From NCBI RefSeq assembly GCF_001194135.2, contig NC_068983.1, positions 134,943,645 to 134,993,738 on the forward strand: a stretch of DNA of 50,094 nucleotides, read 5' to 3'. This DNA is from Octopus bimaculoides (Eukaryota). Under the pieces are notes generated by a model. The model ran no database searches and was not told where the DNA came from. It saw only the letters and a list, made by a program, of their open reading frames with translations. Positions within the stretch are counted from its first letter, which is position 1. Every line of letters starts with the position of its first letter. Shown here one piece after another: positions 17,127 to 50,094 of this stretch. The position numbers and the translations under genes were made by a program.

Positions 17127-17350
17127 TAGTAATCCCTCGCCATATCGTGGTTCACCTATCGTAGTTTATTATTTAAACCTATGTAAATTCTTCCATGGTG
17201 TTGTTTTGCAGTTATAATAAAATAAATATATACAAATTATAAAAATAATTTTTTAAAAATATGCAGCACAGTACTGTTTCTACTTCACGGATTTTCACCT
17301 ATCATGGGGTGTTTTGGAACATAACACCTGCAATAGTCGAGGAATTACTG
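17127..17350. mobile_element. pogo/Tigger-type MITE
   Basis: Termini (t)agtaatccctcg ... cgaggaattactg, followed by TA. Confidence 0.7.
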
Positions 17351-17439
17351 TAGATATATATATATATATATCATCACCAATATATATATATATATATATA
17401 CATATTTGCATATATACTAGAAAAGTGCACTGGTTTCGT

Positions 17440-17700
17440 CCTGTGATGTGATTGGATACGGACAGTTGCATAGAGAAGTGCCAATCACTTAAATTGGATG
17501 GAACTTGTGAAAGAGGGAGACCCATGAAGACATGGTAAGAAGTATTGAAAGCTAATTTCAAGATGTTGGACCTTACGGAGGAGATAACAAAGGACCGAGA
17601 TGATTGGTGTTTCACTGTGCTCAAGAAGACCCACACATTATAGCAAAAATGGCATCCTAAAACCACCAAGTTGAGCTTGTACATGCTACACCCAGTTCCT
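17440..17700 (+). mobile_element. RTE LINE C-terminal fragment (second subfamily)
   Basis: DGTCERGRPMKTW*EVLKANFKMLDLTEEITKDRDDW. Confidence 0.65.
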
Positions 17701-21019: not shown

Positions 21020-21660
21020 AAACGAAATATGGCAAGGAACTACCAACCAATAACCTACCTTCCATTGATGTTATTGAAAGGTGTTATTGCAAAGGATATG
21101 TATAAATATCTTGAAGGGAGAGGCCTATTGCCAGAAGAAAAAAAAAGATGGGTGTAGAAAAGACACACTCATGGTTCCAAGAATGCTTCAATATATTTGG
21201 GATAGCTAAGAATGTTGTTCAGCTCTCACAGAACAATATATCGAAATGGAAAACTAAATTAACATCAAGTCGAGATAAGTTAGACGTGGTCAGCATATAA
21301 AGTGTATATTAGAAGGTGGTACATTCTTGCCGCTGCTATGTACAGTTTGTCTTATTCCTCTTAGGTTAACCTTGAGAGTGACAAAAGTCATTCTGCGAAT
21401 TTAGCAGTGGTGAGAAAATAAATTATCTCCTGTTTATGAATGACCTGAAGTTATTTGCCAGAAAGCCTTAGGTTCATTGGTCCAGACAGAATTGTGAGTC
21501 ACGAGACTGGTATGAAGTTTGGAATAGATAAGTGTGCCGTGCTAGTAAAAAGGAGAGGGGGAAATATCCAAGTCAGAAGGAACTGGATTCCAAATGGGGC
21601 GTTAATCAAAGTAATGTATGACGGTGACAATTACAAGTTTTATAAATTCCTACTTCATTA
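21020..21660 (+). mobile_element. Degenerate non-LTR reverse transcriptase (R4/Dong-like)
   Basis: NYQPITYLP, GLLPEE, LPLLCTVCLIPL, LLFMNDLKLFA, GMKFGIDKCAVL. Confidence 0.75.
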
Positions 21661-21752
21661 TATAAAGAGAAGGGGTGTCAAATTGTGTCCAAAAGGACAC
21701 CATTCTTGTGTAATTATATTTGCACTCGTTTTTTCTCTCTCTGTCTCTGTCG

Positions 21753-21822
<70 letters not shown>

Positions 21823-22289
21823 TGGAACTTTGGAACTTTAGAGTCAGTAACACAGATCAGATTCAGAGATGAGATGACCGTAAGAATGGTTCTTACCACG
21901 ACTAACTTCATTAGAGAACATTATCCTTCCTTTCGTTCTAATACGACAGCCGCCCAGAGTGGGTGCAAGAAGCAGTGCTAGCACAGGTACAACAACAATT
22001 ATAACAAAGGTAACGACAACGTCAGCAATAGGAAAGGCGACATTTTCAACAACGACGATGACGACGACGGCAAAGTGGTATAAGCAACTCTACGCACAAA
22101 CAGTCTTTTGCTAGTATTGTGGTGAATTTAATGAAATATTTCTCTCTCCCTAGCAATGAGGAGGCACGCCTGACACAGCGACACAACTTGTAAAAGTAAA
22201 CAGAAAGATATTCCAAGTTACAATCCCAACCGAGGTTTTAGCAGCAACTACCCTGGAAACCGTACTGTATCGCGGTGTGACGCCTAGAA

Positions 22290-27543: not shown

Positions 27544-28256
27544 ATGTGTGATGGAAGCAGGCAGCAAATGGAGAATTACATCGTAAGAGAGTTCCAAAAC
27601 TTACATGTTTTGTCTACATGTAACTTAGAGAAAATGGACGAATTAGTTCAAGATTTAACCAATGCTCTTGAAGAAACATCCAGGAACAATGGGGAAGAAA
27701 ATTCGGCACCGACCATTATCAGAAGGCATTACAAGAAGAAAAAACCCCGAAAACGGCGGTCGAACACCAACTTGATATGGGAAAGTGGCAACTTCAGCGA
27801 AGCCTCAGAAAGCAGTTTAGATGAAGCTTTTAAAGACTACATCCAGAGTGTTGTTCAGCACAGTGATTCGGATGACTTGGACGTTGTTAAACATCTATCC
27901 CAAATAGGACTTCCTCTTCCTGCTATGGTTCCACCTGTGGAATCCGATTCCGTACCAGAAACTTTTTCCCCGACTGACACGCAACGGAGACGGAGAAAAT
28001 TTCGCAGTATGACTGTCGACCCGATCTCCTGCGACCACTTTACTCTGACTCGGTGTAAAACCAAAGGTTCACGGATCTCGACGCGACAGAGGATGTTTCA
28101 CGATGGCAACATGAATTTAAAATGTTTAACCGAGTCAGACGACGCTATGAACATTTTACCGGGGAAACGAAAACGAAGTCGCAAGTATGACTTTTTTTGT
28201 ACGAATGGAAGCAACAGTGGTGATATCAGAAAAATCGAACTTTCGTCCTTCAATCA
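27544..28256 (+). CDS. GPATCH2: GPATCH2 coding exon 1
   Basis: 238-aa ORF in the track; acceptor ttttatag at 27537; donor CA|GTAAGT at 28257 (phase 2). Confidence 0.9.
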
Positions 28257-31200
28257 GTAAGTTGAAAGATTACTTGTATTTGTTTGTGTATTTTATGTTT
28301 GTTTATTGATACGTTGACAAGTTTTGATATGTTATCGTGCTCCAGCATGGGCAATGTTAACTGGAACCCGTAAAGGAACTCTCTTTGACTGGTTCCAGCA
28401 AGTTAACACGAGCCATCATGTTTTATTTTTGTTTACTTCTCCCAATTACTCACGTGTTTGTATACGTGATGGGTGGGGTGTTTTTCTTTTCTTTTCTTTT
28501 TTTTGTGTGTGTTGTAGAGTTTCATTGTCTACACTTGTTCTCTCTCTCAAAAACAAAACAAAAAAAGAAAAAGAAAAATGTTGTGTGACTTTATTCATTA
28601 ACGTTTACTTTTCATGTTAGAAACCTTCAAAATATCAACAACTGGTATCCATTCATTGATTCAGCTGAATTTTTCAGTTTATACTGTCTTTCTGAACAAT
28701 ATCTATTTTAGAAGAGGACTTTGATGTACTGACCTTATCAATTCTTAACCATATCTATTTTGGGATGTAAAGAGAGGTCTTTGATTGTCGTAATTCACCT
28801 GTGTGGGGATGGGTGAAGGATTTAACTATTCGGTTTTTCATCTTAACAACGTTTATGATTTACTCTGTGCGGAGGTTCGTACTAACATTCTTCCACTTTT
28901 ATTATTATTATTATAACACTAGCATATTTTTATAATATATATATACATACATATTAACACTTTACAGTATATTTACATATATACATACATCTATACATCG
29001 ATCTAAAACAACTGGAATACTAAAGGAAGGCTGGAATTTAAGAGAAGAGAAAACCAAAAGGTCACATGCTGTTCATTTAAAAATTCCTAAGTAGAACTTA
29101 TTATTACCTCCGCCTTTGAAACTGTTTTGAATGGTGAATTTGTTAACTTTGGCTTGTATTAGATAAGGATAAACTATTTATTACTGTTACTAAATTTTCT
29201 ACAACCACCTTCACATTCCATGACTACCATTGGGATCGATCAGGTACCAGCCAGTCGGGTTCATTTTTAGTATTCTTGTTTGTGAGAGCAGTTGAATTTA
29301 TTTCAGATATTCTCATTTTAAAAATCATCTCTGACTAATAGTTGAGAGGACATTGGTGTTGCCTTGGTGGAGGTTTGTGCTTTTTGAGTGCTCTTGTTAT
29401 TTTTTCTTTCTATTGTTGAAGTTATTATGCTAGCATCAACAACCTCTCTGCTGTTACATTCAGCAACACTTACACTTGTACTGATAATACCACACTAACA
29501 TTCTGCACCCAAGCATCATCCACATGTGACTGAGACCCCTAATGACAAATTTGTCAATGACTTGATAAACAGAGTCTTCCAAAACATTCTCCAATGAGGT
29601 CATATTAGTCAATCCTGGGGCCTTCAACAGCCAAAAGATACATTCACTACATATATCAAGAAAGCAATTTTATATCCCATCCCCTCTAAACATGTGAAGC
29701 ACACAACCAGAATTCACAAGGTCACTACAAATACTAAACTGCTCTGTTTCTAAGAATCTCTCCTGGTAATTGCACATCCTCAACATAGCAATATATGCAT
29801 CACAAAGATAGCCTTTCCTTTTCAGGACCAGAAAAATATACATCATTCCTCATTACCTTCTACAAAACCTGGTGAGACTCACAAGGAAGTACTACTCCCA
29901 CATCTAGGATGCTTTTGCTACTGTATACACAGATATCTCAGGGCCACTAGAATGTTGGTACAAGGTTACATCCCAACACATTCAACCTTTGTGTCACAAA
30001 CATGCTGTCTCATCTCTCTGCCTTTTCTAGCACTACTCAATAGTGACTGCTCTTCTAAGTTGTCTGGTCTTACACCATATTCACTCAGGCGCTCCTGACA
30101 CACTCATCTCTCTTCTTTCTATATTGTGTTCAGTCTTCAGTGATTCCTTCACTAATATTTTAACCCACAGCTGTCAACTTGCAACTACTCAAAAGTAACA
30201 TTAGTATCTTCAGTCCCACTGGTCACAGACAGTCTTCAAAAACCATGGATACAACCCCTTCCTCAAAGTCAATAATTATAAAAAAAGTTACACTGAACTA
30301 TTATAAGACAAAACCTTACTGCAGTTATTGTGTTATTAAGAAAGATACATTACTGCATTTGCCTCATTCTGTCTAACTGAAAATAGATGTCAGTCCTAAT
30401 TCCTTGTTGTTTAGGTTGAAGTAGAAAAGGATATTGTGTTATAGAGGCACTTGCTACAGCAATCTATAAATGTTCATAATTGAAGTCACTTTTGTTACCC
30501 ATGAAAAAGATGTCAAATGATGAAACAATACAAAATGGTGTAAACATTACTGAACTTTCAGTTTGATAGCAACGGGTGATGAATAAAACCCAACTAATTT
30601 TATATTGACATATAAAAATACTTAATAACCATTCCTGATTGGTTTCTTTATTGGTTCTATCTTAGTTTATGGTCAGTAATTATTAAAACTGTCATACATT
30701 TTGTTTTAGTATACATAGTAATGAATTTATATTGTCTATAAATGCAAATTAAATAGCTAAGAACATACCATGATGGTTCATCTGTCTTTATGTTCTGATT
30801 ATTTCATTTCTTTCTTGAATTTGTCAGAAAAACGAAGATATAGTCATATTGTCAGGAATACATATTGTCTTTTCCACACATGGTTACTAAATTGGTTTTG
30901 GTAATTTGAAAATTCACTAGATAGAAGGTAAAATCTGCAGATTGTGATATCTGGAACTCATATATTGAAGTTTTAATATCCATCCATCTATCTCTCCAAC
31001 CATTCATTTCCAATGCTGGAATGGATTGGATAAGTCTAGTCAAACATATCTCTGTACATTTCCATCCTATATTCATTTATTTTGGGGATTCAACAATTTC
31101 AAATCTGAAACATTTTCCTTAGCCTACCACCCTTATAAGTACCCACCCCTAACAATTCATGATGCATTCTATCCACAAATGTTTAACAAAACTTTAAAAT

Positions 31201-34200
31201 GAAAGCATGATGTGATCAAGCCAGCCAGCTTATCCTTCAAAAGAAATTATACTCAAACTACATATCTTTGAATAATTTGTGCATTCAATATGTTTTTCTC
31301 TAATATGATGGATTGGCCAAGGGACATATTTGAGGTAGGATTTTAAGACCAGATGCTTTTTCTGTTGCAAACTCTTACCTGATTTTCAAGTAAGGGTTTT
31401 TTTTCTTCTACAGGTTTTCAGAAGCACAAAGTGACCTGTCATACTATCAACAAGGCAAGGAATATAAACTTATCACCATTTTGGTGAGCCAAGCTGTACC
31501 ATTCAATGTCAATATTCATGCACATACACACATATGCTAGACATCCATCGAATTCATTTTCAAGGCATTGGTGGCCTGGAGCTATAGTAAAAGACACTTG
31601 CCAAAAGTGACACACAGAGAGACTGAACTCAAAACTATGTGGTTGCAAAGTGAACTTCTTAACCATACCACCATACCTGTGCAAGCATGAATAACATACC
31701 TGCTTATTGTCATACTTATTTGTTTGAAAGAATAAAATGATTAAGTTGACAAGGTATTGAATTACAAATTCATGGGTTGTGAATTCAAATCTATTGCGGA
31801 CATTTCAATTTCCTGCTTAATATTTATCTGTTCTGGAGTTAAACTTAGTAAAATTGAACCATTTTCTTCATCTTTCAGTGACAATACTAGCAGCTCATTG
31901 AGTAGCAGCGAGAGTGATGCAGGTTTAATTACCAACGATGAATCTCGAGAAGGTAAGACTGCACTTCAAAGTTGTTCCATTGTTTAAGTGTCACTATTAT
32001 TTTTCTTACTAGATAATATTAAGTTTGTGTGATACACTATTTCAGTAACTGGATAAACCTGTAGCATTCTAAAATAAACTGAAAAAGGAAACGTTTTTAT
32101 CAAGTATTTGGAAGGTGGGTTTATATTGTTGGTGATCATATGAAACTATTTTCTAAATCCATTATAATTGTATAATTCTTCATTAGCTACTGCTGACCAT
32201 GTAATAGGGTGTCAATGTAGGATCTAACTTCATATTCTACCCATGTCAGAGTTGCTTAATTGTGGCTAGCTTATTCTACTTACCTGTTGATAGATTCCAT
32301 GAAACAAGAATAAATTGATACTATATATAAGTGGTAAGTGTTTCATTGAAATTTTCTCTTGAAATTAAAAGTATTAATCACCATTTAAGAATGCATCTGA
32401 TTGGAAAAAGTTAGCAATTAACTTTTTCTTATATTTATATATATATACACACCGTATTTACTTGAGTTAAATACATAGATTGATAATTGCTCCATATATT
32501 GTTTTTAAAGGATAGCTTTTATGGCACCTGTGCCCAGCGTCGCCTTCCTGACACTTGTGCCGGTGGCACGTGTAAAGACATTCGAGCAAGATCGTTGCCA
32601 GTGCCGCTGGACTGGCTCCTGTGCAGGTGGCACGTAAAATACACCATTTTGAGCATGGCCATTGCCAGTACCGCCTGACTGGCCTTTGTGCCGGTGGCAC
32701 ATAAAAGCACCCACTACACTCTCGAAGTGGTTGGCGTTAGGAAGGGCATCCAGCTGTAGAAACTCTGCCAAATCAGATTGGAGCCTGGTGTAGCCATCTG
32801 GTTCACCAGTCTTCAGTCAAATCGTCCAACCCATGCTAGCATGGAAAGCAGACGTTAAACGATGAAGATGATGTTCAACAAAGAAGGAAGAATATTGCTC
32901 AAGATTGTTGCGAGACCCCCAGCTAAACTGGATTGGAAAATGAAAGTGATAATCTGACATAAATGCAATTAAGGGTTAATTTGGATTCAAGCAGGTTTCA
33001 AGTGATTCTATTTTCCTATTATTAATTACAGCTGATGACGAACAGAGTGATTTCTACTATGAACCAGGGTCTGCCTGTGGAGTACCAAGCATTATTCCTA
33101 TTTGGGAAACAGATAAGATGGATGATGAAGACAAAGAGGATGAGTTTCAAAAGATTTTCACTGGGACATTTGAACATCTCCCAAAATCTTCACAGCTAAG
33201 TTATACTGCCAGAGTTAAAAAGTTAATGGTAAGAAAACCAGATGTTATCATCTCTATATATTGGTATCATGTATTGTAACTGGTATACAATCAGAAAAAA
33301 ATTAAGATGTTGGAGTACTGATGCAAGGGTTACTGAGTTCAAACCTTGTTACTAGCATTAAATTGTGCACATTTTTGACTGGATTTGGTCAATATTTCAT
33401 CAGTGATGAATGTTGAGATTTAAACATGCTGTCAAGTATAAGATCTGCTTTGATCACCTGCAGCCATATTTTCAGTCGTCCACCATCCAACTTGAATATG
33501 GATTCAAATTAACAGCAACATAATGAAGTCTTACAGAGTGAGTTTTTAGTATAGATTTTTAGCTTTATTGTTCTTGCAGAAGCTACTGTTTTAAGGAAGG
33601 CACACACAATATTCTTTTCAAACACCATTTGTCAAATATTTTCAAATAGCAGATAATCTGAATTTATACAATCCAAGTTTCACAGCTGCAGATACCAGTA
33701 CTTGGAGCACACAGTTCTTCATGTGAAACTTGGTCTACTTGCAGTACCTAGGGTAGTTTTTTTCTACCTGGCAGGCACCTGTCATCCATCCTACCCATGC
33801 ATGCATGGAAGATGGACATTAGACAATGATGATAATATATATTTACTCAAGGTATTAGTTGCTCTGTGACAGTGGAGACCTCTGGTATTCTTGGTCCCTG
33901 AACCATATTCCCTCTCACTGCTGTCGGGGCAGAGATGACTGTCTACAAGTGCAAGCCCTGTGAGTCAAAGTGGCTGTTCCAACACATCTTCCTTGCCATC
34001 CTCTGGGGCAACACCTTTTCCATTTTGTCTGCTGGGGCCATGAGAAATGTTTCTTAATAAAGATGTCAAAAACTGCACACAAAAAATTATCTCTATGTAC
34101 TTTTTCCAATTGTTTGGGCCATGGGCTTCCTGTTGAAAAATGCTTATCTTGCACCAATTTACTGTTCTACATTAAACAATCTCAGTTGATATATTATCTG

Positions 34201-39335: not shown

Positions 39336-40219
39336 CTAATGAAACATCAATTATATAATATTCTGAGTCTTTGCATCAGTGAAATGCACCTATTCATAGC
39401 TGGATGTTGTGAGCATTAAAAATATTAACCAATATACAGTTTATGAATGATCAATTCTTCAGTTAGTGCAATGCTACATTAATTTGGTTTACTATTACTT
39501 TATATAATATTAAACAACTACACTGAATTTCAACAATTCATTGCATGTGGGGTGAACATTACATGTTAGTTTCTTGTATAGGTATAAGCTGTAAGGTTTA
39601 TATGAGATAAATAAAGCTTATGTTTACACCAAAAGGTATTCATTTGTGATGTAAGTGAAATAACTGTTATTGACACAAGAATCAGTTCAAATGAGTTCTT
39701 TCAACCCTATAGTTCTGTCCTGCAAAGTGTAATCACATTTACACAACTATATGATTTCATTGTTATAGGAAAGAGAAATGGGATTGCAAGCAGCTCATTC
39801 CTTTCTCAAGGGTATCTGCAACAAGTGATATGGCTCAAAACATGAATAGGTAAACATGATACACAAGCTTTCATTTTCCTCACACAGCAAAAGACACACT
39901 ACACACACACACACACACATTCATATATGCTTTATTATACATGAAACATGTTTGGGCAGATTATATTATGAAGAACCAAAATATTGTTTTTACTTGTGAG
40001 AAATAACAATGTTATTTGAATAAATGAATATCAGCAATTATGTATGTTTTTTTTTTCTTTTCCAACATTGCACTGATGAGAGAATTGTTCTAAACCCATA
40101 CCCTCAACAATGCATAAAGGTATCACAGTAAGGTGAGCTGAATGTCCAAGATTGAAAAACAGGAAAAAATTCAACAGTCAATTATTATTCAGAATAACAT
40201 CAACCAATTATGGTTGATG

Positions 40220-40328
40220 TTAAAAATATTGTAGAAGTGATGTGGCAATAAAACCACCAGCCCACAGAGCTGGAACAATGACAAATGATAATTTGGAGAG
40301 AAGCATTATACCAGATATACCATGACCA
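40220..40328 (-). CDS. yeeE: YeeE-like terminal exon (IGHGISGIMLLSKLSFVIVPALWAGGFIATSLLQYF*)
   Basis: Acceptor tttttctacttgcag; GHG motif; TAA at 40222-40220. Confidence 0.87.
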
Positions 40329-41328
40329 CTGCAAGTAGAAAAATTTAGAATTACTTAAGATGTTGAAGTGCAATTTTTGTTTTACATATACCTTCATTAT
40401 ATACATATATCATCATCATCATCTTTTAACATATATGTTCCAAACTGGTTTGGGTTGGATGGTTTGACAGAATCTAATGGGTTCAAGGATCGCATCATGC
40501 TACAATATATGTGGGGAAAGTCTTTGCATTCTGAGTTCAAATTCCGCTGAGGTCGACTTTGCCTTTCATCCTTTCGGGGTGGATGAATTAAGTACCAGTT
40601 GCATACTGGGGTCAATCTAATCGACTGGCTCCCTCCCCAAAATTTTAAGGCCTTGTGCCTAGAGTAGAAAAGAATATATGTGCAGGAAGGGTTGACTTAT
40701 ACATTGCTTAAAATTTTCATGAGTGTGAGAGCACATCTATCTCGTTATCTTTAAGTTTGCTTACCGTGTAGCATGGGTAGGTTGTTTTGTCAGGATCTAA
40801 CAGATTGGAGAGCTATGCTTTGCCCCAATGTTTGTTGTTGTTATTGTAGGAGGGGGAGGAAAAGAGTCTAAGTAGAGGGAGGCAGTAGTCCACAAACTCG
40901 AAAGATGAAAGGTAAAGTTAACCTTGGCAGGATTTGAACTCAGCAAGTAAAGGATCAGAACAAATGCTACAAGTTCTTATTCTCAACATATGTACTCTCC
41001 ACTCCTTGAATAAGACATCGCATAAACATCAACTTATTCTGACAAGACTGAACGCTTGGTCATTCTGTTACAAATCAGTAACAGAATGTTATTGTTGTAG
41101 TAGTAGTAGTGGTGGTGGTGATGGTGGCAACATAGACAGCAGCAGCAGAAGTTGATCAACCATAAACACTTAATTGTTGTTTATATAAAGAAACATTTCT
41201 TACTGGGAAATGGGTGCAAGAGTGGCCGTGAAGAGACACAAGGCACGTTATATAAACCTGCCTAATCTCAATGCCTCAGTGGCAAGAAGCTATTAGTAGC
41301 TCTTACCTTAAAGACTGCGTAAATTAAA

Positions 41329-41363
<35 letters not shown>

Positions 41364-44300
41364 CATTTGTGTTCTTTGAAAATTGCTGAGCTACAAGTGT
41401 TGATGTTCTCATATCTCCTTCAACAAATCATTCACAGGGTTAGTGACAGAACAAGCATTCAGCTATAAAACAATGTTGCAATAATATATTCATCTAGCCC
41501 ACGCTAGCATGGAAAAATAGATGTAAAAATTAAAGGTGTGTGTGTTGTGTGTAAGTGTGTGCGCATGCATATGTGTATGCGTGTATTTCAGCAAAAGATG
41601 TAAACATTAAGAACAACTGATAACCAATGCTTAGAAACAAAAACTCCTAATGGTATTTTTTGCACCCAAGTTATAACAACCCTGATCACTGATGCTATTG
41701 TAAATGCAGTGAATCTGTAGTTCGTCCAACAGAAACTCATAATCAATAATGCTTTGGTTACATATTGTAATATAAGATAAATATAACTATACTTACATGT
41801 AACATCCTGCAGCCATCATTGATCCCCAAGATACTAGAACACCACCGAAAAAGGCTTGGTTTCTCGTAACTCGGCTGTATTCATAATTATATGAATGAAA
41901 TGATGAAAAATAAGCTCCAAGTATTAGTCCAAGACTAAAAAATATCTGAAAATTATTGCAGAATAGAAATAATATGGTGATTTATTACTATAGATTAAGA
42001 AGAATACAACAGTTAAAGTTAGAACTACAACATGATTCCAGGGAGAGTATGATTCTGTCAATTACAAATTTGATGGTTCCAGTTAATTCGATCAATGGAA
42101 CAACCTGCTTGTGAAATTAACATGCAAGTGGCTGAGTGCTCTACAGACACACATACTCTTAACATAGTTCGCAGGGAGATTCAGTGTGACACAGAATGTG
42201 AAAAGGCTGGCCCTTTGAATTGCAGGTGCAAACTGATTGAACTGGAGCAATGAGAAATAAAGTGTCTTGTTCAAGGACACAACAAGCTGCTGGGAACTGA
42301 ACTCACAACCTTACAATCATGAGTTGAATACCCTAACCATTAAGCCATCTGGCTTCTCCAAGATATTATACTAATAATATAAAGACTGTCAGAGTTGGCA
42401 AAAATGGTAATGTACTAGTTAAAATATTTTTATAATTAGTAAAAATAATGGTATTTTAACAGTCATTAGTTTCATCCAAATTCATGCTAGTCATTAACAT
42501 TTCCATAATTAAAAGAAATCAATTCACAACAAAAATACATCATATGCCTGGTGAAACATTATCATCAGCAGCAGCATCGTTTTAATGCCCACTTCTCACT
42601 GCCTGCATAGGTTGGACAGAATTTATTGAGGCAGACTTTCTACAGCCAGATGCCCTTCCTGTCACTAGCCCTCACCTGTTTCCAAGAAAGAAATATTTCC
42701 CTATGGTCAGACACGTTTCTACAGAATATTGGAAATGAATGACAGTGACACTCACAACTTGTCATGTAATGTCAAGACAAAGCAACACACACAGCCAATG
42801 GGCTTCTTTCAGTTTCCATGAACCAAATCCAGTGACATGGCTTTGGTCAGCCTAGGATTATAGTAGAAGACTCTTGCCCAAGGTACCACACAGTAAGACT
42901 GAAACTGAAATCATGTGGTTGGGAAGCAAGCTTCTTAACCAAATAGCCATAACTACTGTGGAGGCAAGTTCCTGATGGATAGAGTGGGCCAACCCATCTC
43001 AATTTCCACATAGAACCACTACATTTCAATGGGTTAGATAGTTTATTACCAATGGTCAACATAGCTTCTATACCTACAATTATGACAATAACCACTGTCA
43101 TCATCATCATTTAACATGCATTTTCCATACTAGCACAGGGTGGAAGTTTGACAGGAGCTGGCAAAGCCAGGATCCATACCAAGCTCCATTGTCTGTTTGG
43201 CATTGTTGTTACAGCTGGATGTTCTTCCTACTGCCAACCAATTTATAAAGTGTGCTGGGTGCTTTTTACATGATGCCAGCAGCAGTGCTTTTTTTTTTTT
43301 TTTTTTTTGGAGGGGGGATATTTTGTATATGCACAGAGTGGAAAGGTTTTCAGTCATATAATATAACCAATAAGAAGATGCCAAATGAGAAAGCCTCTAT
43401 GTTTTTCTAACAACTTGCTCAAAATAGCAACAAAATCTCCACAAATAACATCCTAACATCTTAAAAAAAGGAAGAACACATTGAATCATGTAATCTTGGA
43501 TACATTATGCCCATGAAAATATCAATCAGAGGTCAGCTTAATCAGGTCTAACTTGAAACTAAACAACAATATTTATTTCATTGTTAATAATATGGAAGAA
43601 GATATGAATGAATATTATGTCAGCTTCTCCATCTCGTTCACTTAATACATAAAATACAGTATTTAAATCAATATTTGAATTTCATCATTCTAATTCAACT
43701 AAAATTACAAAAACATGTCTGATGTTTGCTGAATTGAAAACTGATAAGTTAAAGAGTAGATAATTTCTATATTAAATGTCAAAAGCAGGACTCACCCAGA
43801 AGTACTCAGTTGAAATTTTAGAAGACTTTGATGGAAGTTTTCCTTTTTTAAAAATACTCATCAATGTTTTATTGATAACAGTAAAAACTTCACTGTTTGC
43901 TATAAAAGAAATTTAAATATATAAGAGAGTGAGTGTGTGTGTTTGTGTGTGTTTATTTGCATTATGGGAGTGTGTATTTGTTTGTTCTTTGTAAATATGT
44001 GTCAGTTTGTTATAAATATTTATTACACGAGTGTATTTTTTTCAGTATCTTTCAATATTGAAAGCAATTCAAATTCAATTTTTTTTATTATATATTTTGT
44101 CACAAAGTGGATTGTATTTAAAGCTAATCCTTCAACCAAGAAAATGGACAGCCACCTATTTTTCAAGTTAATATGCATCCTTCATTCCTTCTTAAGTCCC
44201 TGTACACAAGCACTATTTAGATGTAACCTAGTCACCTCATTCAAGACCAACACTACTTCCACAAACAAAAACCGCAAACATCTTCCAATGAAGACTTAGC

Positions 44301-47300
44301 AACTTAATCTTCAACAGAATAAAGACATAATCACTACACACATCAAGGAAAACAGTTTTGCACTCTCTACACATGAAAAACAAAGTCAGGACAACAGGCC
44401 TCACAGTTGAATATATAACTGCCAAAACTGCATCTCAGAGATAAATCTTCCACTTCAAGGCCATAAAAGACTTTAACTCTGATTAATTGCTGACCTACTA
44501 AGACAAACATTAGAGTACAGCTTACATATCTAGAACAGTGATGTTGTTACACAAACATCTTAAATTACACCCCAAAACAGGTCATTTGATTGATTTACAA
44601 AAATTTACTCACCGACACACTACAACCACTGACTAAAAGATGAGCTGTTTCCATTCTCTGTCTCTGTTGTTGCTACTACAATTGTTTGTCATGGAACTGC
44701 TTAGCTACAGACTCCCTCCACCTAGGCCTACTTGATACATCTGTCTCTTTCTTCCTCTTACCCTCACCACTGTATCTCATTCACCACATCCAGACAATTT
44801 TTCCAATCCTTCCAACCAGAATATTATCTTCAGGAATACACTCTACACTTAAATTTTCCTGGAGGCATCAACCTTTAGAGATTCAAAGTGAACACCAATC
44901 ACATCAAACCCACTACAATAGGAGGACCTGTAAAGATCAAGAGTAGTACCCCTTCTCTGTGACTAACTTATCCTCATGATTTTTAACAACAGATGAGAGA
45001 TTAGAATAAAACATCCTTCCACCACCTACCCCTATTTTTTTTTTCTCTGTTAGCCCTAACAAAATTTGTCAACTTAATCATCAATATTAATTACCTTACA
45101 ACTACCATCATCAGTGCTGTCATCAACATCTTCTTCTTACAGCCTCTTTCCATGCTGTCATGTGTTGGACAGGTCTTTACAGTTGAAGTTAGTTCTTATT
45201 CTAAATTACTGCCAGCCTAAACAAATTTAAGGACCATGTCACACTCATATGTTCCAATTTTGGCATGGCTTCTACAGCTTCTTAATTCTTAATTTAGAAT
45301 AATTCATTGAAAACGTCATCAAAATATTATTGAGATATTTTAGATGAAGTCTCTCTTGTAAGAATTGCTTCTACTGTTGTAAAGAGAAACAGTAAAAACT
45401 GAAAATTTTACACATCCTCTCCAAGCCACTGACTCTGAACCAGAATGATATCTCATTTAAACATGAAAGATTATACCTTGATAACAAAAAAATATAAATA
45501 CAACAGCAAAGGTGAGACTTACTGATAACTTTGTTAAAACTTCCTATAAGAATTAGTTGCAATATGGCAGTTGAAATTCCAATGAGATATGGAGACCAAA
45601 CTGGAGCAAATAACCAGCTTCCACCACCAAATCTAACCTAATTAAATAAAAAAGAATGTATAATATATCAAATCATTAAAGTTTCGTCATAATCTTTATA
45701 TTTTATTTAGCTTTCTTTCTTGATAATAAGTATGTTAACTCCACTGCTTATAAGACAGAAGTGACAAATGACTGAATTAATAAAGTGCTGGATTACTGAG
45801 AAACCAAACAGTCTGTGTCTCACCACTGTTACTGGGCTATATTTGTGGCCAAGACACTTAATTTTCTATAGTTAAGTCCACCAAACTGTAAATAGTAACC
45901 ATTTATAGAGACCACTTATTACTGCAATGTGTAGGAGCACCGTATAATTAAAGAATATTTTATTAGATTGCAATGCTGAATTCAAAACTTCTAAAAGACT
46001 GAATAAAGTAAGAAGCTTCAACAGTTACTGCAGCTTCCTTAATGGCTAGACAATTTGAGGATTGTTTCCATTTTAATTATGCACCCTGGTCTAATTTAGG
46101 CTGGAGTGACAGTTTATCCTACATTAAATTCGTTGTCCCAAACATAGACTCACTACAGATTCATTTCTTAAATATGTTTGTACCCCACCAGCACTGGTGT
46201 GCTCAAGTCTCCATAACTTAGCAGTTTGGCAAACGAGACCAATAGAATAAGCACCAGGCTTTAAAAAAATAAGTATTGGGGATGATTCGATCAACTAAAA
46301 TTCTTCAAGGTGGTGCCCCAGGATGGCCACGGTCTAATGATTGAAACAAGTAAAAGAAAAGTGTGAAAGATCATATTTTGGTAAAAATAAACCAGAACAT
46401 GGTTCTTTCTCCCAGCTCTATGTTTATAATTCCCATATCAAATGCTTGTCTTTGTGAAGATATTTCATATAAATTTAAATTATCTTTGGAGCTATTCTTT
46501 ATTAAAAGTTCAACTTTGAGAAAACTCTTTTTTTTTCAAGAAATATAAAAATGAATAAAGTATCAAGAGTAAAAGTTGTAACACTAAATTTCAATGTAAC
46601 AATGACACTTACCAAATATTCATTCTGCCAAGGCTTATGAAGCTCTAAGAAAAACGTTACAGTCGCCAGGATTACAGCTAAAGGCATTGCCACATTGAAG
46701 TAAGGTGTCGACATGGAGTAATGTAAACTACAATTAAAAATGATTAATATTTTTTTTTAAGTGTGATTCCACTATAATTTCTAAATAGATATAAAATAGG
46801 TATTTATAACATATGGTCAAATTCAGTCTTGCAATGCACATGCTACTCTTTGATTCTTAATATGAGACACACAAAACTATTTAGCTAAAATACTTTTTGC
46901 ATCCAATTAATGTGAAAAAAAATGCATAAAATTAATTCAAAAAGGGATGAAATACAAATGTTTTCAATATAATTACCTAAATGAACTTACCTACCTATTT
47001 ACCCTGTGCAGTCCTCTGGACTACTTCTCTCATATTAACTTTTCCTGTAACTTGAGGATATGCCCTGACACGCACTACCATCTTCTCTTTTTTTCCAACT
47101 AGGACAGCCATGTATCATTTCTACAGCAAGACACCTGTTCCTGTCTCTCTATCATACTTTAAACTTTCATTACCTTGCATAAATCCACCCCCACTCAACA
47201 CTACACTCACCTCAGTTGAAGGGTCATGTCTTATAAGTTATTTGCTGAGCTCACTCATGCAAGTGCCATCTAAAAAAAATGTATCTAGTACAGTCTGTGA

Positions 47301-49803
47301 AGTGGTTGGCAATAAGATCATTCAGCCATAGAAATCATGCCACAGCAGACATTAGAGTTTGGGTGCAGTCCTCTAGTTCATTGGCTCCTGTCAAATTATC
47401 CAACCCATGCCAGTATGAAAAACAGATGATGATGATATGGCTATCATTTCCATCTTCATGTTCTTATCTCTTGTCACAAAGATTTATACATATCTGTCCA
47501 TCCTTCCTCTGAACAATTTTGTCTTTATCATTCCCTCCATTTCTACAAACATTTTATTCTTTACATACAGACCAATGATCATAAGTGTAATAATAATGTA
47601 ACGATCACAGATCACATTCCTCTGCTAACTACCTTTACCATCTCATTTTTTTCGTTGTGTATATATATATATATATTTCCATTTGGCCATATCCCACTTT
47701 GCTTTCTCACTTCCCCCACTTCATTTGACCTGGTCCTAACCACCTCCCTCTCCTTTCAGTTGATCTGAATCTTGTCACAAGCTCTTCTACCCCTTTCTTC
47801 TATATTACTTCCTCCCACTCCTACAGCTTAACTCACAACCTACTCACATCAGTTCTCATTTTTCTCTCTTCTCTTCCCACACTAACCATCCTTGACTACT
47901 CTCTTCTTTATTCACTTCTTCATTTGTGACTTAAGAACTAAGCTACTGCATTTCTACATTTTTTTCTCTCTCCTCAAACAAAGATAAGTATCTGAAACTC
48001 TAGAATTCTCTTCTTCACAACACAAAATTTGTTTAAATTTTTGTCAATGTAAAACATCACTACTTTCACTGAATTCTGCTATTTTACTGCTCTAATTTTC
48101 AGCTAGAACTTGGTATCCCTACCATTTTATAGAGTTCAGTGATCAATTCAAAATAAAATATACCACTAACAATATACCACTTAAAAATTAACTGCATTAT
48201 AATTTACCTCATTATTGCTATCCTCTTGTTTGGAAGGATTTGCAAAGAGACTGTGAGCCTGTCTGTCCTAAAACTAATGCAAATAAAGAAATGATACAAA
48301 GACAACAAAAGTCTTAGAAAATATTATATGGTTACTTACTAAGTTTGTCTGGATGTTTTACTTTTAGCAGCAAGAGGAGGAATAACATCATATAAAACTG
48401 TACCACAGTAAGCCCCAAGGAATACATAAAGAGCATAAGGTACACCTGAACCCAGTTGAACAAACATAGAAACAGGACACTGGAGAAAATGTGAAAAGAT
48501 AAAATGAAATTAGTTTCCTGTCTTAATTTGTTAGTTTGTTGCTATAATTGTTATAGGATGTAGAATTGGTAGAATCTTTTGAGCCTTGAACAGAATACCT
48601 TGTGGTATTTGCTCTGGTCCCTTATGTTCTGATTTCATCTCATCTTTTTGCCAGGTAGTGTATCTATGATTACATTATCCAATAAGTCATTTTATAAGGC
48701 AATAAGGTGTGATTTAAAGAAGATTTTTATTTCTATTTCTAGCAGGTTAAGTGACCGGGAAGATGCTCCCTCACAGTTTACTTGACACATAGACATATAT
48801 GGCACAGCAATGGGCTAGATACTTCATATGACCTAGATTTGGTCCACTGTTCACAATTTAGAAAATGAAGGACACATTGGATAATGTATTTCTAGATACA
48901 CTGACAGAAAAAGGTAAGCTAGTATGATAAAAAATTGAATGCCTTTGAGCATAGATTTGCATGATCAATGATCAACTGATGCTAAACAACAGTGACAACT
49001 GATGTTAAGAAGGCTAAGTTGATCATGGTAGGATTTCATTGAGATAGATATGTAAGTTTGTTTGTTTTTTTTTTATATGGTTTTGAGATGAAATCCTACC
49101 ATGATCAACTTAGCCTTCTTAACATCAGTTGTCACTGGCAAAAGGATGAGATGAAATCAGAACATAAGGGACCAGAGCAAATACCACAAGGTATTCTATT
49201 CAAGGCTCAAAAGATTCTACTAGATTTTTTAAAAAGTTATATTTTAAAGTATTAATGATCTTTGTAGATAAAAAATCTGTTTTTTTATAGGTACAGGCAC
49301 GACTGTATTGTTAAGAATTTCACTTTGCAGCCAGAAAAGGTTTTGGGTTCAATCCTATCACATGACACCTTGAGCAAGTGTCTTCTACTAGAACCATGTC
49401 TTATGAGTGAATTTGGTAGGTGGAAACTGTGTTGAAGCACGTGTGTGTGTGTGTTTATCACCTCACTGCTCTACTTTGTGTATGTCCTTGTAACTTGGTA
49501 TTTCAGTAAAAGAGATAGAGTAAGTACCAAACTTAAAAACAAAAAAAACTGAGTACTGGAGTTGATATATTCGAGTAAACTCTTCAATGATTGAAACAAG
49601 AGAAAGATAAAAGATAGTGTTATTATCGAGATTCTAGAGACTTACAGCTCCAGCACATGCCACACCAGCTCCCATAAACAGCCCTCCAAGAATGCCAGAC
49701 AAGTAGGATTGATCAATCAGATTAGCAGAATGGTAGATCAAGGTATTTTCAACTGCTCCACCATGTCCTTGAAGCATGCTTGCAATAGAGCAGAGAAACA
49801 TGC
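40220..49803 (-). CDS. yeeE: YeeE/YedE-family (TsuA-like, Sulf_transp) thiosulfate/sulfur-compound transporter, 5'-partial; exons 49803-49646, 48479-48340, 46727-46613, 45637-45523, 43899-43796, 41945-41797, 40328-40220
   Basis: Seven GT-AG exons, phases matched (0,2,0,1,0,2), no internal stop, about 295 aa. Two family motifs: ILGGLFMGAGVACAGA-CP and FFGGVLVSWGSMMAAGC-YIGHGISG; WSPY motif; many hydrophobic Gly-rich helices. Confidence 0.87.
40490..40680 (+). mobile_element. SINE (aattccgctgaggtcgactttgcctttcatcctttcggggt family); related copies at about 20230-20350, 36290-36490, 40860-41000, 46170-46360, 49490-49620
   Basis: Recurrent motifs gactttgcctttcatcctttcgggg, ttaagtaccagtt, gatctaatcgact. 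Confidence 0.65.
41797..41945 (-). CDS. yeeE: YeeE-like exon (IFFSLGLILGAYFSS...AFFGGVLVSWGSMMAAGCY)
   Basis: Acceptor ataattttcag; donor AT|GTAAGT; second family motif. Confidence 0.87.
42090..42358 (-). mobile_element. tRNA-derived SINE, same family as 18360
   Basis: A/B-box-like head gatggcttaatggttaggg...gtgagttcagttccc plus shared body. Confidence 0.7.
43796..43899 (-). CDS. yeeE: YeeE-like exon (NSEVFTVINKTLMSIFKKGKLPSKSSKISTEYFW)
   Basis: Acceptor tttcttttatag; donor TGG|GTGAGT; phase 1 to 0 bridges its neighbours. Confidence 0.78.
44170..44640 (+). mobile_element. Possible degenerate Penelope-like (GIY-YIG) fragment; similar debris at about 16090-16260 and 29500-29900
   Basis: A/C-skewed decayed frames; APTYTANKKDCRFC at 16120 resembles the C-x-x-C tail of Penelope endonucleases. 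Confidence 0.35.
45523..45637 (-). CDS. yeeE: YeeE-like exon (VRFGGGSWLFAPVWSPYLIGISTAILQLILIGSFNKVI)
   Basis: Acceptor cttttttatttaattag; donor A|GTAAGT. Confidence 0.85.
46613..46727 (-). CDS. yeeE: YeeE-like exon (LHYSMSTPYFNVAMPLAVILATVTFFLELHKPWQNEYL)
   Basis: Acceptor tttttaattgtag; donor TTG|GTAAGT. Confidence 0.85.
48340..48479 (-). CDS. yeeE: YeeE-like exon (CPVSMFVQLGSGVPYALYVFLGAYCGTVLYDV...)
   Basis: Acceptor cacattttctccag; donor |GTAAGT; supplies the conserved Cys-Pro. Confidence 0.87.
49646..49803 (-). CDS. yeeE: YeeE-like exon (MFLCSIASML...ILGGLFMGAGVACAGA)
   Basis: Acceptor ctatatttcag; donor GCT|GTAAGT; lies within track ORF 49634-49840. Confidence 0.87.
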
Positions 49804-50094
49804 CTGAAATATAGCCAAATATCATTATTACAACAATCATGAAAATTATTTAAAGGAGTTGCTTAATTATGTATATGTGAAAATATTGCTATAAATTAAT
49901 TCTGGGTTAAAATCCTTTGTAAGTGAAATAGGGAGCAAGAAAGATTTCACTTAGAATAAACATACTTGCTGTTTTGTGTATTATTTAATTATTTGCTCAT
50001 ATTATTGCACTAACACCACCAAATGAAACATTCAGATACATATATATGTATGTGTGTGTGTATATATATATCTATATATATAAAAATGAGAATG

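What the first reader, a model, noticed from the sequence alone, without database searches (positions are those of the whole stretch)
40220..49803. Spliced animal gene for a YeeE/YedE (TsuA-type) thiosulfate transporter
Seen: 7 intact exons giving a Gly-rich polytopic protein with the paired motifs GGLFMGAGVACAGA-C-P and GGVLVSWGSMMAAG-C-YIGHG. Established: bacterial YeeE/TsuA imports thiosulfate through a relay of three conserved Cys, and the family is characterised in prokaryotes. Two relay-type Cys are present here; the first would lie upstream of the window. Six canonical introns among host SINEs argue against contamination. Inference: a cephalopod retains an uncharacterised inorganic-sulfur transport route, via ancient transfer or patchy retention, possibly tied to sulfide/thiosulfate handling.
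Basis: partly seen in the sequence, partly recalled or inferred. Interest (0 to 1): 0.8.

Follow-up and report, generated by a model that had tools for sequence, protein, structure and literature searches.

The report
Octopus YeeE-like sulfur transporter gene
A real, spliced and expressed octopus gene encodes a membrane protein of the bacterial YeeE/YedE sulfur-transporter superfamily, but it belongs to an already annotated eukaryotic branch with two pore cysteines instead of three, and no member of that branch has a tested substrate.

Summary
Seven minus-strand exons (49803-40220) joined by six GT-AG introns encode residues 60-355 of Octopus bimaculoides LOC106872003. One RNA contig joins all seven exons exactly at these junctions.

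The protein hits Pfam Sulf_transp (104 bits). Its AlphaFold model (pLDDT 89.5) matches only the YeeE/TsuA crystal structures.

- It is not a TsuA orthologue. The NCBIfam TsuA models score 28-33 bits against cut-offs of 400-645.
- The predicted upstream cysteine does not exist. The two upstream exons contain no Cys, and the TsuA Cys22/25 position is Phe33.
- It is not a cephalopod oddity or a recent transfer. Relatives occur in cuttlefish, argonaut, abalone, scallop, all echinoderm classes, a sponge, ichthyosporeans, protists and hundreds of fungi. RefSeq already calls many of them "thiosulfate transporter TsuA-like".
- Octopus and starfish share five of eight intron positions and phases, and a sixth nearly, which indicates vertical descent.

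The nearest prokaryotic relatives are two adjacent half-size genes, mostly in Alphaproteobacteria. The eukaryotic protein is their order-swapped fusion.

It most likely conducts a small reduced inorganic sulfur species (thiosulfate or sulfane sulfur). The substrate and direction are untested. This is an ordinary annotated gene from an uncharacterised subfamily, of moderate interest.

The parts
49646..49803 (-). Coding exon 3 of the gene, the first exon inside the window. It has a phase-1 acceptor (tttcag|GC) and encodes G60-A112, ending in GGLFMGAGVACAGA.
   Evidence: tblastn and boundary inspection. RNA contig piece 49646-49806 is joined to 48479. Raw reads cross the 48479/49646 junction.
49804..50094 (-). 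The 3' part of intron 2. The two upstream coding exons (aa 1-31 and 32-59) lie beyond the window end.
   Evidence: The O. vulgaris locus L001 has exons at 10001-10094 and 15094-15177 upstream of the orthologous exon. The RNA contig continues about 328 nt past 49803.
48340..48479 (-). Coding exon 4. It starts with the Cys113 codon (48479-48477) of the GACP motif, the equivalent of StYeeE Cys91.
   Evidence: RNA junctions 48479/49646 and 46727/48340. Alignment to 6LEO.
46613..46727 (-). Coding exon 5, encoding the central transmembrane helix region (YLHYSMSTPYFNVAMPLAVILATVTFFLELHKPWQNEYL).
   Evidence: RNA contig pieces.
45523..45637 (-). Coding exon 6 (VRFGGGSWLFAPVWSPYLIGISTAILQLILIGSFNKVI).
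   Evidence: RNA contig pieces.
43796..43899 (-). Coding exon 7 (TNSEVFTVINKTLMSIFKKGKLPSKSSKISTEYFW).
   Evidence: RNA contig pieces.
41797..41945 (-). Coding exon 8. It holds the Cys318 codon (41804-41802) of AAGCY(I)GHG, the equivalent of StYeeE Cys293. The alternative acceptor at 41874, used by RefSeq isoform X2, shifts the frame and removes this motif.
   Evidence: RNA contig piece 41797-41945, the canonical form.
40220..40328 (-). Last coding exon (GHGISGIMLLSKLSFVIVPALWAGGFIATSLLQYF plus TAA).
   Evidence: RNA contig piece 39549-40328.
39549..40219 (-). 3' untranslated region, with a minimum extent of about 670 nt.
   Evidence: The same 1892-nt RNA contig runs continuously from 40328 down to 39549.
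43098..43272 (.). An interspersed repeat of about 175 nt inside intron 7. It has 74-76% identical copies at 5655-5829, 16605-16775 and 32703-32871. It is SINE-like but was not classified.
   Evidence: Self-blastn. Copies also occur in the O. vulgaris locus.

Best explanation
The window holds exons 3-9 of a nine-coding-exon nuclear gene of Octopus bimaculoides, LOC106872003. The gene is intact, expressed and vertically inherited. It encodes a 355-residue polytopic membrane protein with the YeeE 'hourglass' fold.

The protein belongs to a eukaryote-wide subfamily of the Sulf_transp (YeeE/YedE) superfamily. Three signatures define this subfamily: EK(S/G)(K/R)VF(E/D)P near the N-terminus, G(A/S)CP in the N-half, and GC(T/Y)(S/I)GHG(I/L)SG in the C-half. 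Its closest prokaryotic relatives are pairs of adjacent half-size genes, mostly alphaproteobacterial. The first gene (about 171 aa) corresponds to the C-half and the second (about 206 aa) to the N-half, so the eukaryotic protein is their order-swapped fusion.

Inferred mechanism: as in TsuA, re-entrant loops and half-helices narrow the centre of the protein. Two cysteines sit at their N-termini, C113 at the centre and C318 on the outer side, and guide a small anionic reduced-sulfur species through the constriction. Candidate substrates are thiosulfate, or sulfane/zero-valent sulfur as reported for YedE1E2. The third, cytoplasm-side cysteine of TsuA, which hands thiosulfate to the TusA-like partner TsuB/YeeD, is Phe here. 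I therefore infer facilitated passage without a TsuB-coupled step.

Animals detoxify sulfide to thiosulfate, so I think the most likely role is in handling sulfide-oxidation products or sulfane sulfur rather than in sulfur assimilation.

Shown: the gene structure, expression, family and fold, the cysteine pattern, the taxon spread, the shared introns and the split-gene relatives. Inferred: the substrate, the direction of transport, the membrane in which it sits and the physiological role.
For: Gene model and splicing. Orthologous, collinear locus in O. vulgaris (about 90% nt identity including introns, nine coding exons). Purifying selection: dN/dS 0.34 (14 synonymous, 16 non-synonymous differences over 296 codons). 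Conservation in Argonauta (70%) and Sepia (48%). Family: Pfam Sulf_transp 104 bits. Fold: AlphaFold2 pLDDT 89.5 and pTM 0.90; Foldseek against the PDB returns only 6LEO, 6LEP, 8K1R and 8J4C (probability 1.00, TM 0.60-0.68), and the next hit has E 0.045. Cysteine pattern: the alignments place C113 and C318 at the St C91 and C293 positions and F33 at C22. The model has short helices beginning right after F33, C113 and C318 (H35-42, H114-123, H319-328). Split relatives: nearly all of the 80 prokaryotic loci show gene 1 matching profile positions about 210-362 and gene 2 matching about 9-202, with 120-165 bits per half in Proteobacteria. The motif EKSRVFEP is identical in scallop, starfish and Alphaproteobacteria. 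Sulfur context of the prokaryotic relatives: an MBL+rhodanese (persulfide-dioxygenase-like) neighbour in 11 of 80 loci, FCSD flavoprotein in 5, plus ArsR, CsoR-like and SulP genes. A metagenomic fusion joins BLH_phosphatase to Sulf_transp. Vertical descent: 5 of 8 introns are identical in position and phase between octopus and Asterias rubens, and a sixth lies within 2 alignment columns. Homologues occur in a sponge, echinoderms, molluscs and ichthyosporeans. Literature: StYeeE C22A still complements growth whereas C91A and C293A do not (PMC7449682). PmpA/PmpB carry only the C91 and C293 equivalents (PMC11582611). YedE1E2 is reported as a zero-valent sulfur transporter encoded next to a persulfide dioxygenase (PMC10812762).
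Against: No transport assay exists for any eukaryotic member in the library I searched. The substrate is extrapolated from relatives that are 18-30% identical. In E. coli TsuA all three cysteines are essential (PMC7449682), so a two-Cys protein may work differently or carry something else. The genomic context of the closest alphaproteobacterial pairs is heterogeneous (CcoG, ABC-F, FAD monooxygenase and others). The PDO-rhodanese neighbour was found in only 11 of 80 loci, and the cluster's representative comes from a Clostridia genome. Cephalopod sequences are the most divergent of the clade: GGCTSGHG has become AGCYIGHG, LGGSxxYCT has become ITNSEVFTV, and the branch is long. Some change of function in cephalopods is therefore possible. 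dN/dS rests on only 30 differences. Deep nodes of my NJ tree are unsupported: the group of metazoa, protists and proteobacterial pairs has 14% bootstrap.
Confidence: 0.8

Rival explanations
1. The gene is a TsuA-type thiosulfate importer that uses a three-cysteine relay, with the first cysteine encoded upstream of the window, and it supplies thiosulfate as a sulfur source.
For: Same superfamily and same fold as TsuA. Two of the three relay cysteines are conserved. RefSeq names animal homologues 'thiosulfate transporter TsuA-like'. StYeeE C22A still supports growth (PMC7449682), so thiosulfate transport with two cysteines is not excluded.
Against: TsuA equivalog models score 32.7 and 27.9 bits against cut-offs of 400 and 645. 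Identity to EcTsuA is 18%. The upstream exons have no Cys and the relay position is Phe33. No TusA/YeeD-like gene lies next to the gene in octopus; the neighbours are a cation-efflux gene and a product without Pfam hits, though operon logic does not apply in animals. Animals are not known to assimilate thiosulfate into cysteine (general knowledge, not tested here).
Confidence: 0.12
2. The gene is a bacterial contaminant or a recent horizontal transfer into cephalopods.
For: The family is overwhelmingly prokaryotic and fungal. The animal distribution is patchy.
Against: There are eight spliceosomal introns in all, six of them inside the window. Host interspersed repeats lie in the introns. The locus is collinear on chromosome-scale scaffolds of two Octopus species. 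Spliced mRNA is present. Five or six intron positions and phases are shared with a starfish. Homologues occur in a sponge, echinoderms, other molluscs and ichthyosporeans. The best prokaryotic identity is only 30-37%.
Confidence: 0.02
3. The gene is a decaying or function-less relic. It is transcribed but no longer encodes a working transporter in cephalopods.
For: Cephalopod sequences are the most divergent in the clade and have altered several otherwise near-invariant motifs. A RefSeq isoform (X2) uses an alternative acceptor at 41874 that frameshifts away the C-terminal Cys motif. dN/dS of 0.34 is not very low.
Against: The 355-codon ORF is intact in O. bimaculoides, O. vulgaris and Argonauta, and a 361-codon ORF is intact in Sepia. 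Both pore cysteines and the flanking glycines, Pro114 and His322 are retained. The structure prediction is confident. The canonical isoform is the one assembled from RNA. dN/dS is below 1.
Confidence: 0.05
4. The protein carries a non-sulfur or selenium substrate (YedE/FdhT-like selenium handling, or another small anion), so the sulfur label is misleading.
For: The superfamily includes YedE/FdhT, which is linked to selenium metabolism. The NCBIfam YedE model scores about the same as the TsuA models (27.7 bits). No eukaryotic member has been assayed.
Against: 27.7 bits is far below the cut-off of 350. The neighbours of the closest prokaryotic relatives that can be interpreted are sulfur enzymes (PDO-rhodanese, FCSD, SulP). 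Fusions are with BLH_phosphatase and YgaP-like domains of sulfur pathways.
Confidence: 0.08

Closest known systems
TsuA/YeeE thiosulfate transporter (E. coli b2013; Spirochaeta thermophila, PDB 6LEO, 8K1R)
   Same: Same Pfam family (Sulf_transp) and same hourglass fold (Foldseek probability 1.00, TM 0.6-0.68). Similar length (355 aa against about 330-350). The cysteines equivalent to St C91 and C293, the two indispensable in StYeeE, are conserved at the starts of short central helices.
   Different: Only 16-18% identity. The NCBIfam TsuA cut-offs are missed by more than tenfold. The cytoplasmic Cys22/25 that faces TsuB is Phe. The post-Cys motif is GHG(I/L)SG rather than GNGLVM. No adjacent TusA-like TsuB was found. 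The gene is nuclear and intron-bearing.
Split 'long-half' YeeE/YedE gene pairs of Alphaproteobacteria (e.g. Xanthobacter, Rhodoplanes, Bradyrhizobium; annotated only as 'YeeE/YedE thiosulfate transporter family protein')
   Same: They are the closest prokaryotic relatives: 30% identity to octopus and 37% to starfish, with 120-165 bits per half against the eukaryote profile. They share the signature motifs EKSRVFEP, GACPG and GCTSGHG(L/I)SG. They have two cysteines and none at the TsuA C22 position.
   Different: They are encoded as two genes in the order C-half then N-half, whereas the octopus protein is one chain in the order N-half then C-half. They are uncharacterised experimentally as far as I could find.
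PmpA/PmpB, also called YedE1/YedE2 (Serratia, Cupriavidus, Sinorhizobium). These are short two-protein members, and YedE1E2 is reported as a zero-valent sulfur transporter next to a persulfide dioxygenase.
   Same: Same two-cysteine logic, with one Cys per half at the C91 and C293 positions and no C22 equivalent (PMC11582611). Sulfide-detoxification context (PMC10812762), which matches part of the context seen for the split relatives here.
   Different: They are about 130-140 aa each, have four helices per protein and lack the central helix. The octopus protein hits the corresponding Pfam DUF6691 only weakly (E 0.04, 14.6 bits against a cut-off of 27). A tblastn of an alphaproteobacterial N-half against all PLSDB plasmids found three weak hits (33-36% identity over 57% of the query) in Spirosoma and Runella plasmids, annotated DUF395 YeeE/YedE or DUF6691 family.
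RefSeq-annotated animal homologues ('thiosulfate transporter TsuA-like' and 'UPF0394 inner membrane protein YeeE-like' of Haliotis, Pecten, Asterias, Apostichopus, Diadema, Amphiura, Anneissia and Oscarella)
   Same: Same subfamily, same architecture and same motifs. Intron positions are shared with Asterias.
   Different: Cephalopod proteins lack the 20-190-residue N-terminal extensions of many of these homologues. They have diverged at several near-invariant motifs. Identity is only 28-33%.

Membership tests
Sulf_transp / YeeE-YedE superfamily (Pfam PF04143) | Significant full-length match to the Pfam model above its gathering score | tested here: met
   104.2 bits against a cut-off of 27, profile positions 7-310 of 310. 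The window-encoded halves alone give 30.2 and 40.8 bits.
Sulf_transp / YeeE-YedE superfamily (Pfam PF04143) | YeeE hourglass fold with central re-entrant loops and half-helices | tested here: met
   AlphaFold2 model with pLDDT 89.5. Foldseek hits only YeeE structures: probability 1.00, TM 0.60-0.68, rmsd about 6.7 A.
TsuA (thiosulfate transporter proper) | Scores above the NCBIfam equivalog/exception cut-offs (NF052577, NF041049) | tested here: not met
   32.7 bits against 400 and 27.9 bits against 645.
TsuA (thiosulfate transporter proper) | Three conserved pore cysteines (St C22, C91, C293; Ec C25, C94, C302) | tested here: not met
   C113 and C318 are present. The C22/C25 position is Phe33, and there is no Cys anywhere in residues 1-59.
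TsuA (thiosulfate transporter proper) | Works with an adjacent or fused TusA-like TsuB/YeeD partner | tested here: inconclusive
   No TusA-like gene lies next to the O. vulgaris orthologue; the neighbours are a Cation_efflux gene and a gene without a Pfam hit. Adjacency is not expected in animals, and the rest of the octopus genome could not be searched with these tools.
TsuA (thiosulfate transporter proper) | Mediates thiosulfate uptake | not testable with these tools
   This needs complementation or proteoliposome assays.
Eukaryote-type fused two-Cys Sulf_transp subfamily (informal) | Single chain in the order N-half then C-half, with motifs EK(S/G)(K/R)VF(E/D)P, G(A/S)CP and GCxxGHGxSG | tested here: met
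   EKSKVFDP, GACP and GCYIGHGISG. The order relative to the split bacterial genes is shown.
Eukaryote-type fused two-Cys Sulf_transp subfamily (informal) | Descent shared with other animal members (intron positions) | tested here: met
   5 of 8 introns are identical in alignment column and phase with Asterias rubens, and a sixth lies within 2 columns.
PmpAB / YedE1E2 (DUF6691-type short pairs) | Two separate proteins of about 130-140 aa; match to the Pfam DUF6691 model | tested here: not met
   The octopus protein is a single 355-aa chain. DUF6691 scores 14.6 bits against a cut-off of 27.
YedE/FdhT selenium-metabolism membrane protein | Scores above the NCBIfam NF033796 cut-off | tested here: not met
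   27.7 bits against 350.

The most novel reading that the evidence does not exclude
The eukaryote-type two-cysteine YeeE-like proteins may be the so far unidentified membrane route for thiosulfate or sulfane sulfur in the sulfide-detoxification pathway of marine invertebrates, fungi and protists. They would have been inherited from an alphaproteobacterial two-gene transporter, possibly of mitochondrial ancestry, that fused in swapped order early in eukaryote evolution and was later lost in vertebrates, arthropods and nematodes.
Probability: 0.15. Interest if true: 0.7.

Novelty: new member of a known kind. Interest (0 to 1): 0.35.

Why it matters
Sulfide-exposed marine animals oxidise H2S to thiosulfate. 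To my knowledge it is not established how thiosulfate or sulfane sulfur crosses their membranes. A conserved YeeE-fold protein in molluscs, echinoderms, sponges, holozoan protists and fungi is a concrete candidate, and it can be tested with assays already established for bacterial TsuA and YedE1E2. The subfamily also gives a natural experiment on the relay model, because two cysteines suffice across hundreds of eukaryotic and split bacterial members. For annotation, the RefSeq label 'thiosulfate transporter TsuA-like' overstates what is known, since these proteins fail the TsuA model cut-offs and lack the TsuB-facing cysteine. For the scan itself, the finding is a correctly read but already annotated gene.

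Tried and rejected
- An exact look-up of the O. bimaculoides isoform X2 protein found no contig, so the upstream exons could not be read from O. bimaculoides DNA. I used the RefSeq protein N-terminus and the O. vulgaris locus instead.
- A third read-laying run was meant to count reads at the last three junctions and at the isoform-X2 acceptor. Those three junctions rest on the assembled RNA contig alone.
- The first word-indexed protein search found only 6 hits. Profile searches and the exhaustive representative search were needed to see the family.
- The Rfam scan of the window found nothing, and the tRNA scan of 39-50 kb found nothing.
- A tblastn of an alphaproteobacterial N-half against PLSDB plasmids was meant to reach S. 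meliloti YedE1E2 on pSymA. It returned only three weak Bacteroidota hits, so I dropped the idea that the closest relatives are PmpAB/YedE1E2 proper.
- Pfam scans of other long ORFs in the window (27544-28260, 4875-5405, 17295-17684, 21455-21841, 18925-19326) gave nothing usable.
- The first tree script timed out. I replaced it with a numpy NJ implementation, and its deep nodes are unsupported.
- A literature search for any study of animal or fungal members found none. One query was too loose to be informative.
- I considered a mitochondrial presequence. The octopus N-terminus runs straight into TM1, and the N-terminal extensions of other animals are heterogeneous. I make no localisation claim.

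Full report
WHAT IS THERE

The gene lies on the minus strand. Stop-to-stop translation and a tblastn with the Octopus vulgaris orthologue located seven coding segments. Inspection of the boundaries gave these exons: 49803-49646, 48479-48340, 46727-46613, 45637-45523, 43899-43796, 41945-41797 and 40328-40220. The stop codon TAA is at 40222-40220.

All six introns (975-1850 nt) are GT..AG, five of them starting GTAAGT. The joined sequence encodes 296 residues without a stop. Residues 60-270 are identical to RefSeq 'uncharacterized protein LOC106872003 isoform X2' of Octopus bimaculoides, so the window comes from that species.

The window-encoded part is 10.5% Gly.

EXPRESSION AND SPLICING

Eighteen public runs, fourteen of them listed as probable RNA, hold every sampled word of the first exon. 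One assembled RNA contig of 1892 nt (run X1, depth 24.5) contains, contiguously, 39549-40328, 41797-41945, 43796-43899, 45523-45637, 46613-46727, 48340-48479 and 49646-49803. It then continues about 328 nt that are not in the window.

So every predicted junction is used, the 3' UTR is at least 670 nt, and about 178 coding nt plus a 5' UTR lie upstream. Raw reads of two 2026 RNA-seq runs cross the 46727/48340 and 48479/49646 junctions.

RefSeq isoform X2 uses an alternative acceptor at 41874 (atacag|CCGAG), 71 nt inside exon 8. This shifts the frame and deletes the C-terminal cysteine motif. The assembled transcript is the canonical form.

THE MISSING 5' END AND THE 'FIRST CYSTEINE'

The O. vulgaris locus (L001, on a 182-Mb scaffold) is collinear with the window at about 88-94% nucleotide identity, introns included. 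It has nine coding exons, and the two upstream ones encode residues 1-31 and 32-59. In O. bimaculoides these 59 residues are MWLGQNKFVSSGPFSAILLGMVLGLLLEKSKVFDPEIVQKQMLFENFVMLKLFFSTLAT. They contain no cysteine.

In the HMMER alignment to the S. thermophila YeeE crystal sequence, St C22 aligns with Phe33 (EKSKVF against QRGRIC). St C91 aligns with C113 (GACP) and St C293 with C318 (AGCYIGHG). A 50-sequence alignment including E. coli TsuA gives the same result. That position exists and is not a cysteine.

FAMILY AND FOLD

The full-length protein matches Pfam Sulf_transp at 104 bits over nearly the whole model. It is not a TsuA orthologue:
- The NCBIfam TsuA models score 32.7 and 27.9 bits against cut-offs of 400 and 645.
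- The YedE/FdhT model scores 27.7 bits against 350.

An AlphaFold2 model built with a 41-sequence alignment is confident (pLDDT 89.5, pTM 0.90). A Foldseek search of the PDB returns only the YeeE/TsuA structures 6LEO, 6LEP, 8K1R and 8J4C (probability 1.00, TM 0.60-0.68, 16-18% identity). Everything else has E of 0.045 or worse. In the model, short helices start immediately after F33, C113 and C318 (H35-42, H114-123, H319-328). This corresponds to the loop and half-helix arrangement that puts the TsuA cysteines in the central constriction (PMC7449682).

WHO ELSE HAS IT

An exhaustive HMMER search of 1.84 billion representatives gave 986 clusters at E of 0.001 or better and 33 at 1e-30 or better. 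Every hit among the best whose source carries a name is eukaryotic:
- Cephalopods: Sepia pharaonis (48%) and Argonauta (70%).
- Other molluscs: Haliotis and Pecten.
- Echinoderms: holothurians, echinoids, asteroids, an ophiuroid and crinoids.
- The sponge Oscarella.
- The ichthyosporeans Sphaeroforma and Amoebidium.
- Goniomonas, Chrysophaeum and chytrids.

A profile search also finds hundreds of Ascomycota and some Mucoromycota. RefSeq already names many animal members 'thiosulfate transporter TsuA-like' or 'UPF0394 inner membrane protein YeeE-like'. Ikei et al. 2024 state that YeeE-like proteins occur in eukaryotes (PMC11073785). I found no paper that characterises any eukaryotic member.

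VERTICAL DESCENT, NOT TRANSFER INTO CEPHALOPODS

I mapped the exons of the Asterias rubens gene (L083, nine coding exons) and of the O. vulgaris gene onto a common alignment. Five of eight introns fall in the same column with the same phase. These include the one directly before the Cys-Pro of GACP and the one inside the GC(Y/T)..GHG motif. A sixth differs by two columns next to a gap.

Together with the sponge and ichthyosporean homologues, this shows that the gene was present in the bilaterian ancestor and probably earlier in holozoans, and was then lost in many lineages. An NJ tree gives 100% bootstrap for cephalopods and places them beside Haliotis and Pecten. That node and the deeper nodes are weak (31-40%).

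Between the two Octopus species dN/dS is 0.34, from 14 synonymous and 16 non-synonymous changes. Cephalopod sequences are the most divergent of the animal set.

NEAREST PROKARYOTES AND ARCHITECTURE

A scan of one genome per prokaryotic species returned 513 relatives. The best 80 are mostly Alphaproteobacteria (Hyphomicrobiales, Bradyrhizobium, Xanthobacter, Rhodoplanes, Acetobacteraceae), at 30-39% identity.

In nearly every one of these 80 loci the match is two adjacent genes. The first, about 171 aa, matches the C-terminal half of the eukaryote profile (positions about 210-362). The second, about 206 aa, matches the N-terminal half including the central helix (positions about 9-202). Each scores 120-165 bits in Proteobacteria and 60-105 bits in other phyla. 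The eukaryotic protein is therefore a fusion of the two halves in swapped order.

The motifs EKSRVFEP, GACPG and GCTSGHG(L/I)SG are shared almost letter for letter between scallop or starfish and Alphaproteobacteria. None of these sequences has a Cys at the TsuA C22/25 position. The one exception is an unnamed eukaryote-type sequence.

On the trimmed alignment:
- Starfish is 37% identical to the proteobacterial pairs, 37% to protist members, 30% to fungal members and 21.5% to EcTsuA.
- Octopus is 30% identical to the proteobacterial pairs, 29% to protist members, 24% to fungal members and 18% to EcTsuA.

An alphaproteobacterial source is suggested but not demonstrated. Bootstrap for that grouping is 14%.

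WHAT THE RELATIVES DO

In the 80 prokaryotic loci the commonest neighbour family (11 loci) is a metallo-beta-lactamase plus rhodanese fusion of the persulfide-dioxygenase type. Five loci carry an FCSD sulfide-dehydrogenase flavoprotein. Others carry ArsR and CsoR-like regulators or SulP. There are also unrelated genes such as CcoG and ABC-F. Metagenomic fusions join Sulf_transp to a BLH_phosphatase domain or a YgaP-like segment.

The literature supplies three relevant points:
- In StYeeE, C91A and C293A abolish function but C22A does not. In E. coli TsuA all three cysteines are needed (PMC7449682).
- C22 abuts the catalytic Cys of TsuB/YeeD (PMC11073785).
- The short PmpA/PmpB proteins carry only the C91 and C293 equivalents (PMC11582611). 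The PmpAB-like YedE1E2, encoded next to a persulfide dioxygenase, is reported to take up zero-valent sulfur (PMC10812762).

The octopus protein is not a PmpAB member. DUF6691 scores 14.6 bits against a cut-off of 27. A plasmid-wide tblastn with an alphaproteobacterial half found three weak hits in Spirosoma and Runella plasmids, annotated DUF395 YeeE/YedE or DUF6691 family.

MOST LIKELY MECHANISM

Shown: a YeeE-fold membrane protein with two cysteines at the central constriction.

Inferred: it lets a small anionic reduced-sulfur species (thiosulfate or sulfane sulfur) pass a membrane by transient interaction with C318 and then C113. There would be no TsuB-coupled capture step, because the TsuB-facing cysteine is absent. 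Animals produce thiosulfate when they detoxify sulfide and are not known to assimilate it. I therefore consider handling of sulfide-oxidation products or sulfane sulfur the more likely physiological role. The membrane, the direction and the substrate are all untested.

VERDICT

It is wrong about TsuA orthology and the upstream cysteine, and it overstates novelty. This is an already annotated member of a widespread but experimentally untouched eukaryotic subfamily.

What I add:
- the two-cysteine pattern;
- the order-swapped fusion of a split, mainly alphaproteobacterial, gene pair;
- the octopus-starfish intron conservation.

Interest is moderate.

Noticed in passing
window 48569-48654 and 49135-49220 (intron between exons 49646 and 48479): Two 86-nt arms, 97.7% identical and in inverted orientation, lie about 480 nt apart. 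A further self-complementary stretch at 48990-49137 sits between them. This looks like a foldback or MITE-like insertion in the intron.
   Followed up: no
window 41874 (inside exon 41945-41797): RefSeq isoform X2 of LOC106872003 uses this alternative acceptor (atacag|CCGAG). The 71-nt shorter exon shifts the frame and replaces the C-terminal 85 residues, including the Cys318 motif, with 68 unrelated ones. The assembled RNA contig shows the canonical acceptor.
   Followed up: partly
window 27544-28260 (+): A 238-codon ATG-to-stop ORF on the opposite strand, rich in Ser/Lys/Arg, is the longest gap-free ORF in the first 40 kb of the window. It has no Pfam hit. It may be an exon of the neighbouring gene.
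   Followed up: partly
window 5655-5829, 16605-16775, 32703-32871, 43098-43272; also 40520-40677: A family of interspersed repeats of about 170-175 nt has 74-86% identical copies in the window and in the O. vulgaris locus. RNA-run depth over such repeats is very high, for example more than 10,000 at 40370-40583. They are SINE-like, but no tRNA-like head was detected by ARAGORN in 39-50 kb.
   Followed up: partly
window 1011-1468, 2723-3132, 7032-7571, 10488-10718, 16947-17115, 18715-18838, 23283-24062: These are assembly gaps (runs of N), mostly flanked by (TA)n and (CA)n microsatellites. They produce long spurious X-filled ORFs.
   Followed up: yes
window 44001-48000: GC skew on the + strand drops to about -0.26 over the middle of the gene, against about 0 elsewhere in the window.
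   Followed up: no
P0126 (Haliotis asinina 'thiosulfate transporter TsuA-like'): This abalone homologue has lost the central cysteine (GAAP instead of GACP) and has SDHIISG instead of SGHG(L/I)SG. It is a possible change of function within the animal clade.
   Followed up: no
P0125 (Phlyctochytrium planicorne, 689 aa) and P0293 (metagenomic, 755 aa): The chytrid protein is a tandem duplication of the transporter, a full copy followed by a near-full one that lacks the first transmembrane helix. P0293 fuses a BLH_phosphatase (DUF442) domain, known from Blh persulfide-dioxygenase proteins, to a full Sulf_transp domain.
   Followed up: partly
L001 1-9684 (O. vulgaris): The upstream neighbour of the orthologue, on the opposite strand, is a Cation_efflux (ZnT-type) gene. 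The downstream neighbour has no Pfam hit.
   Followed up: no
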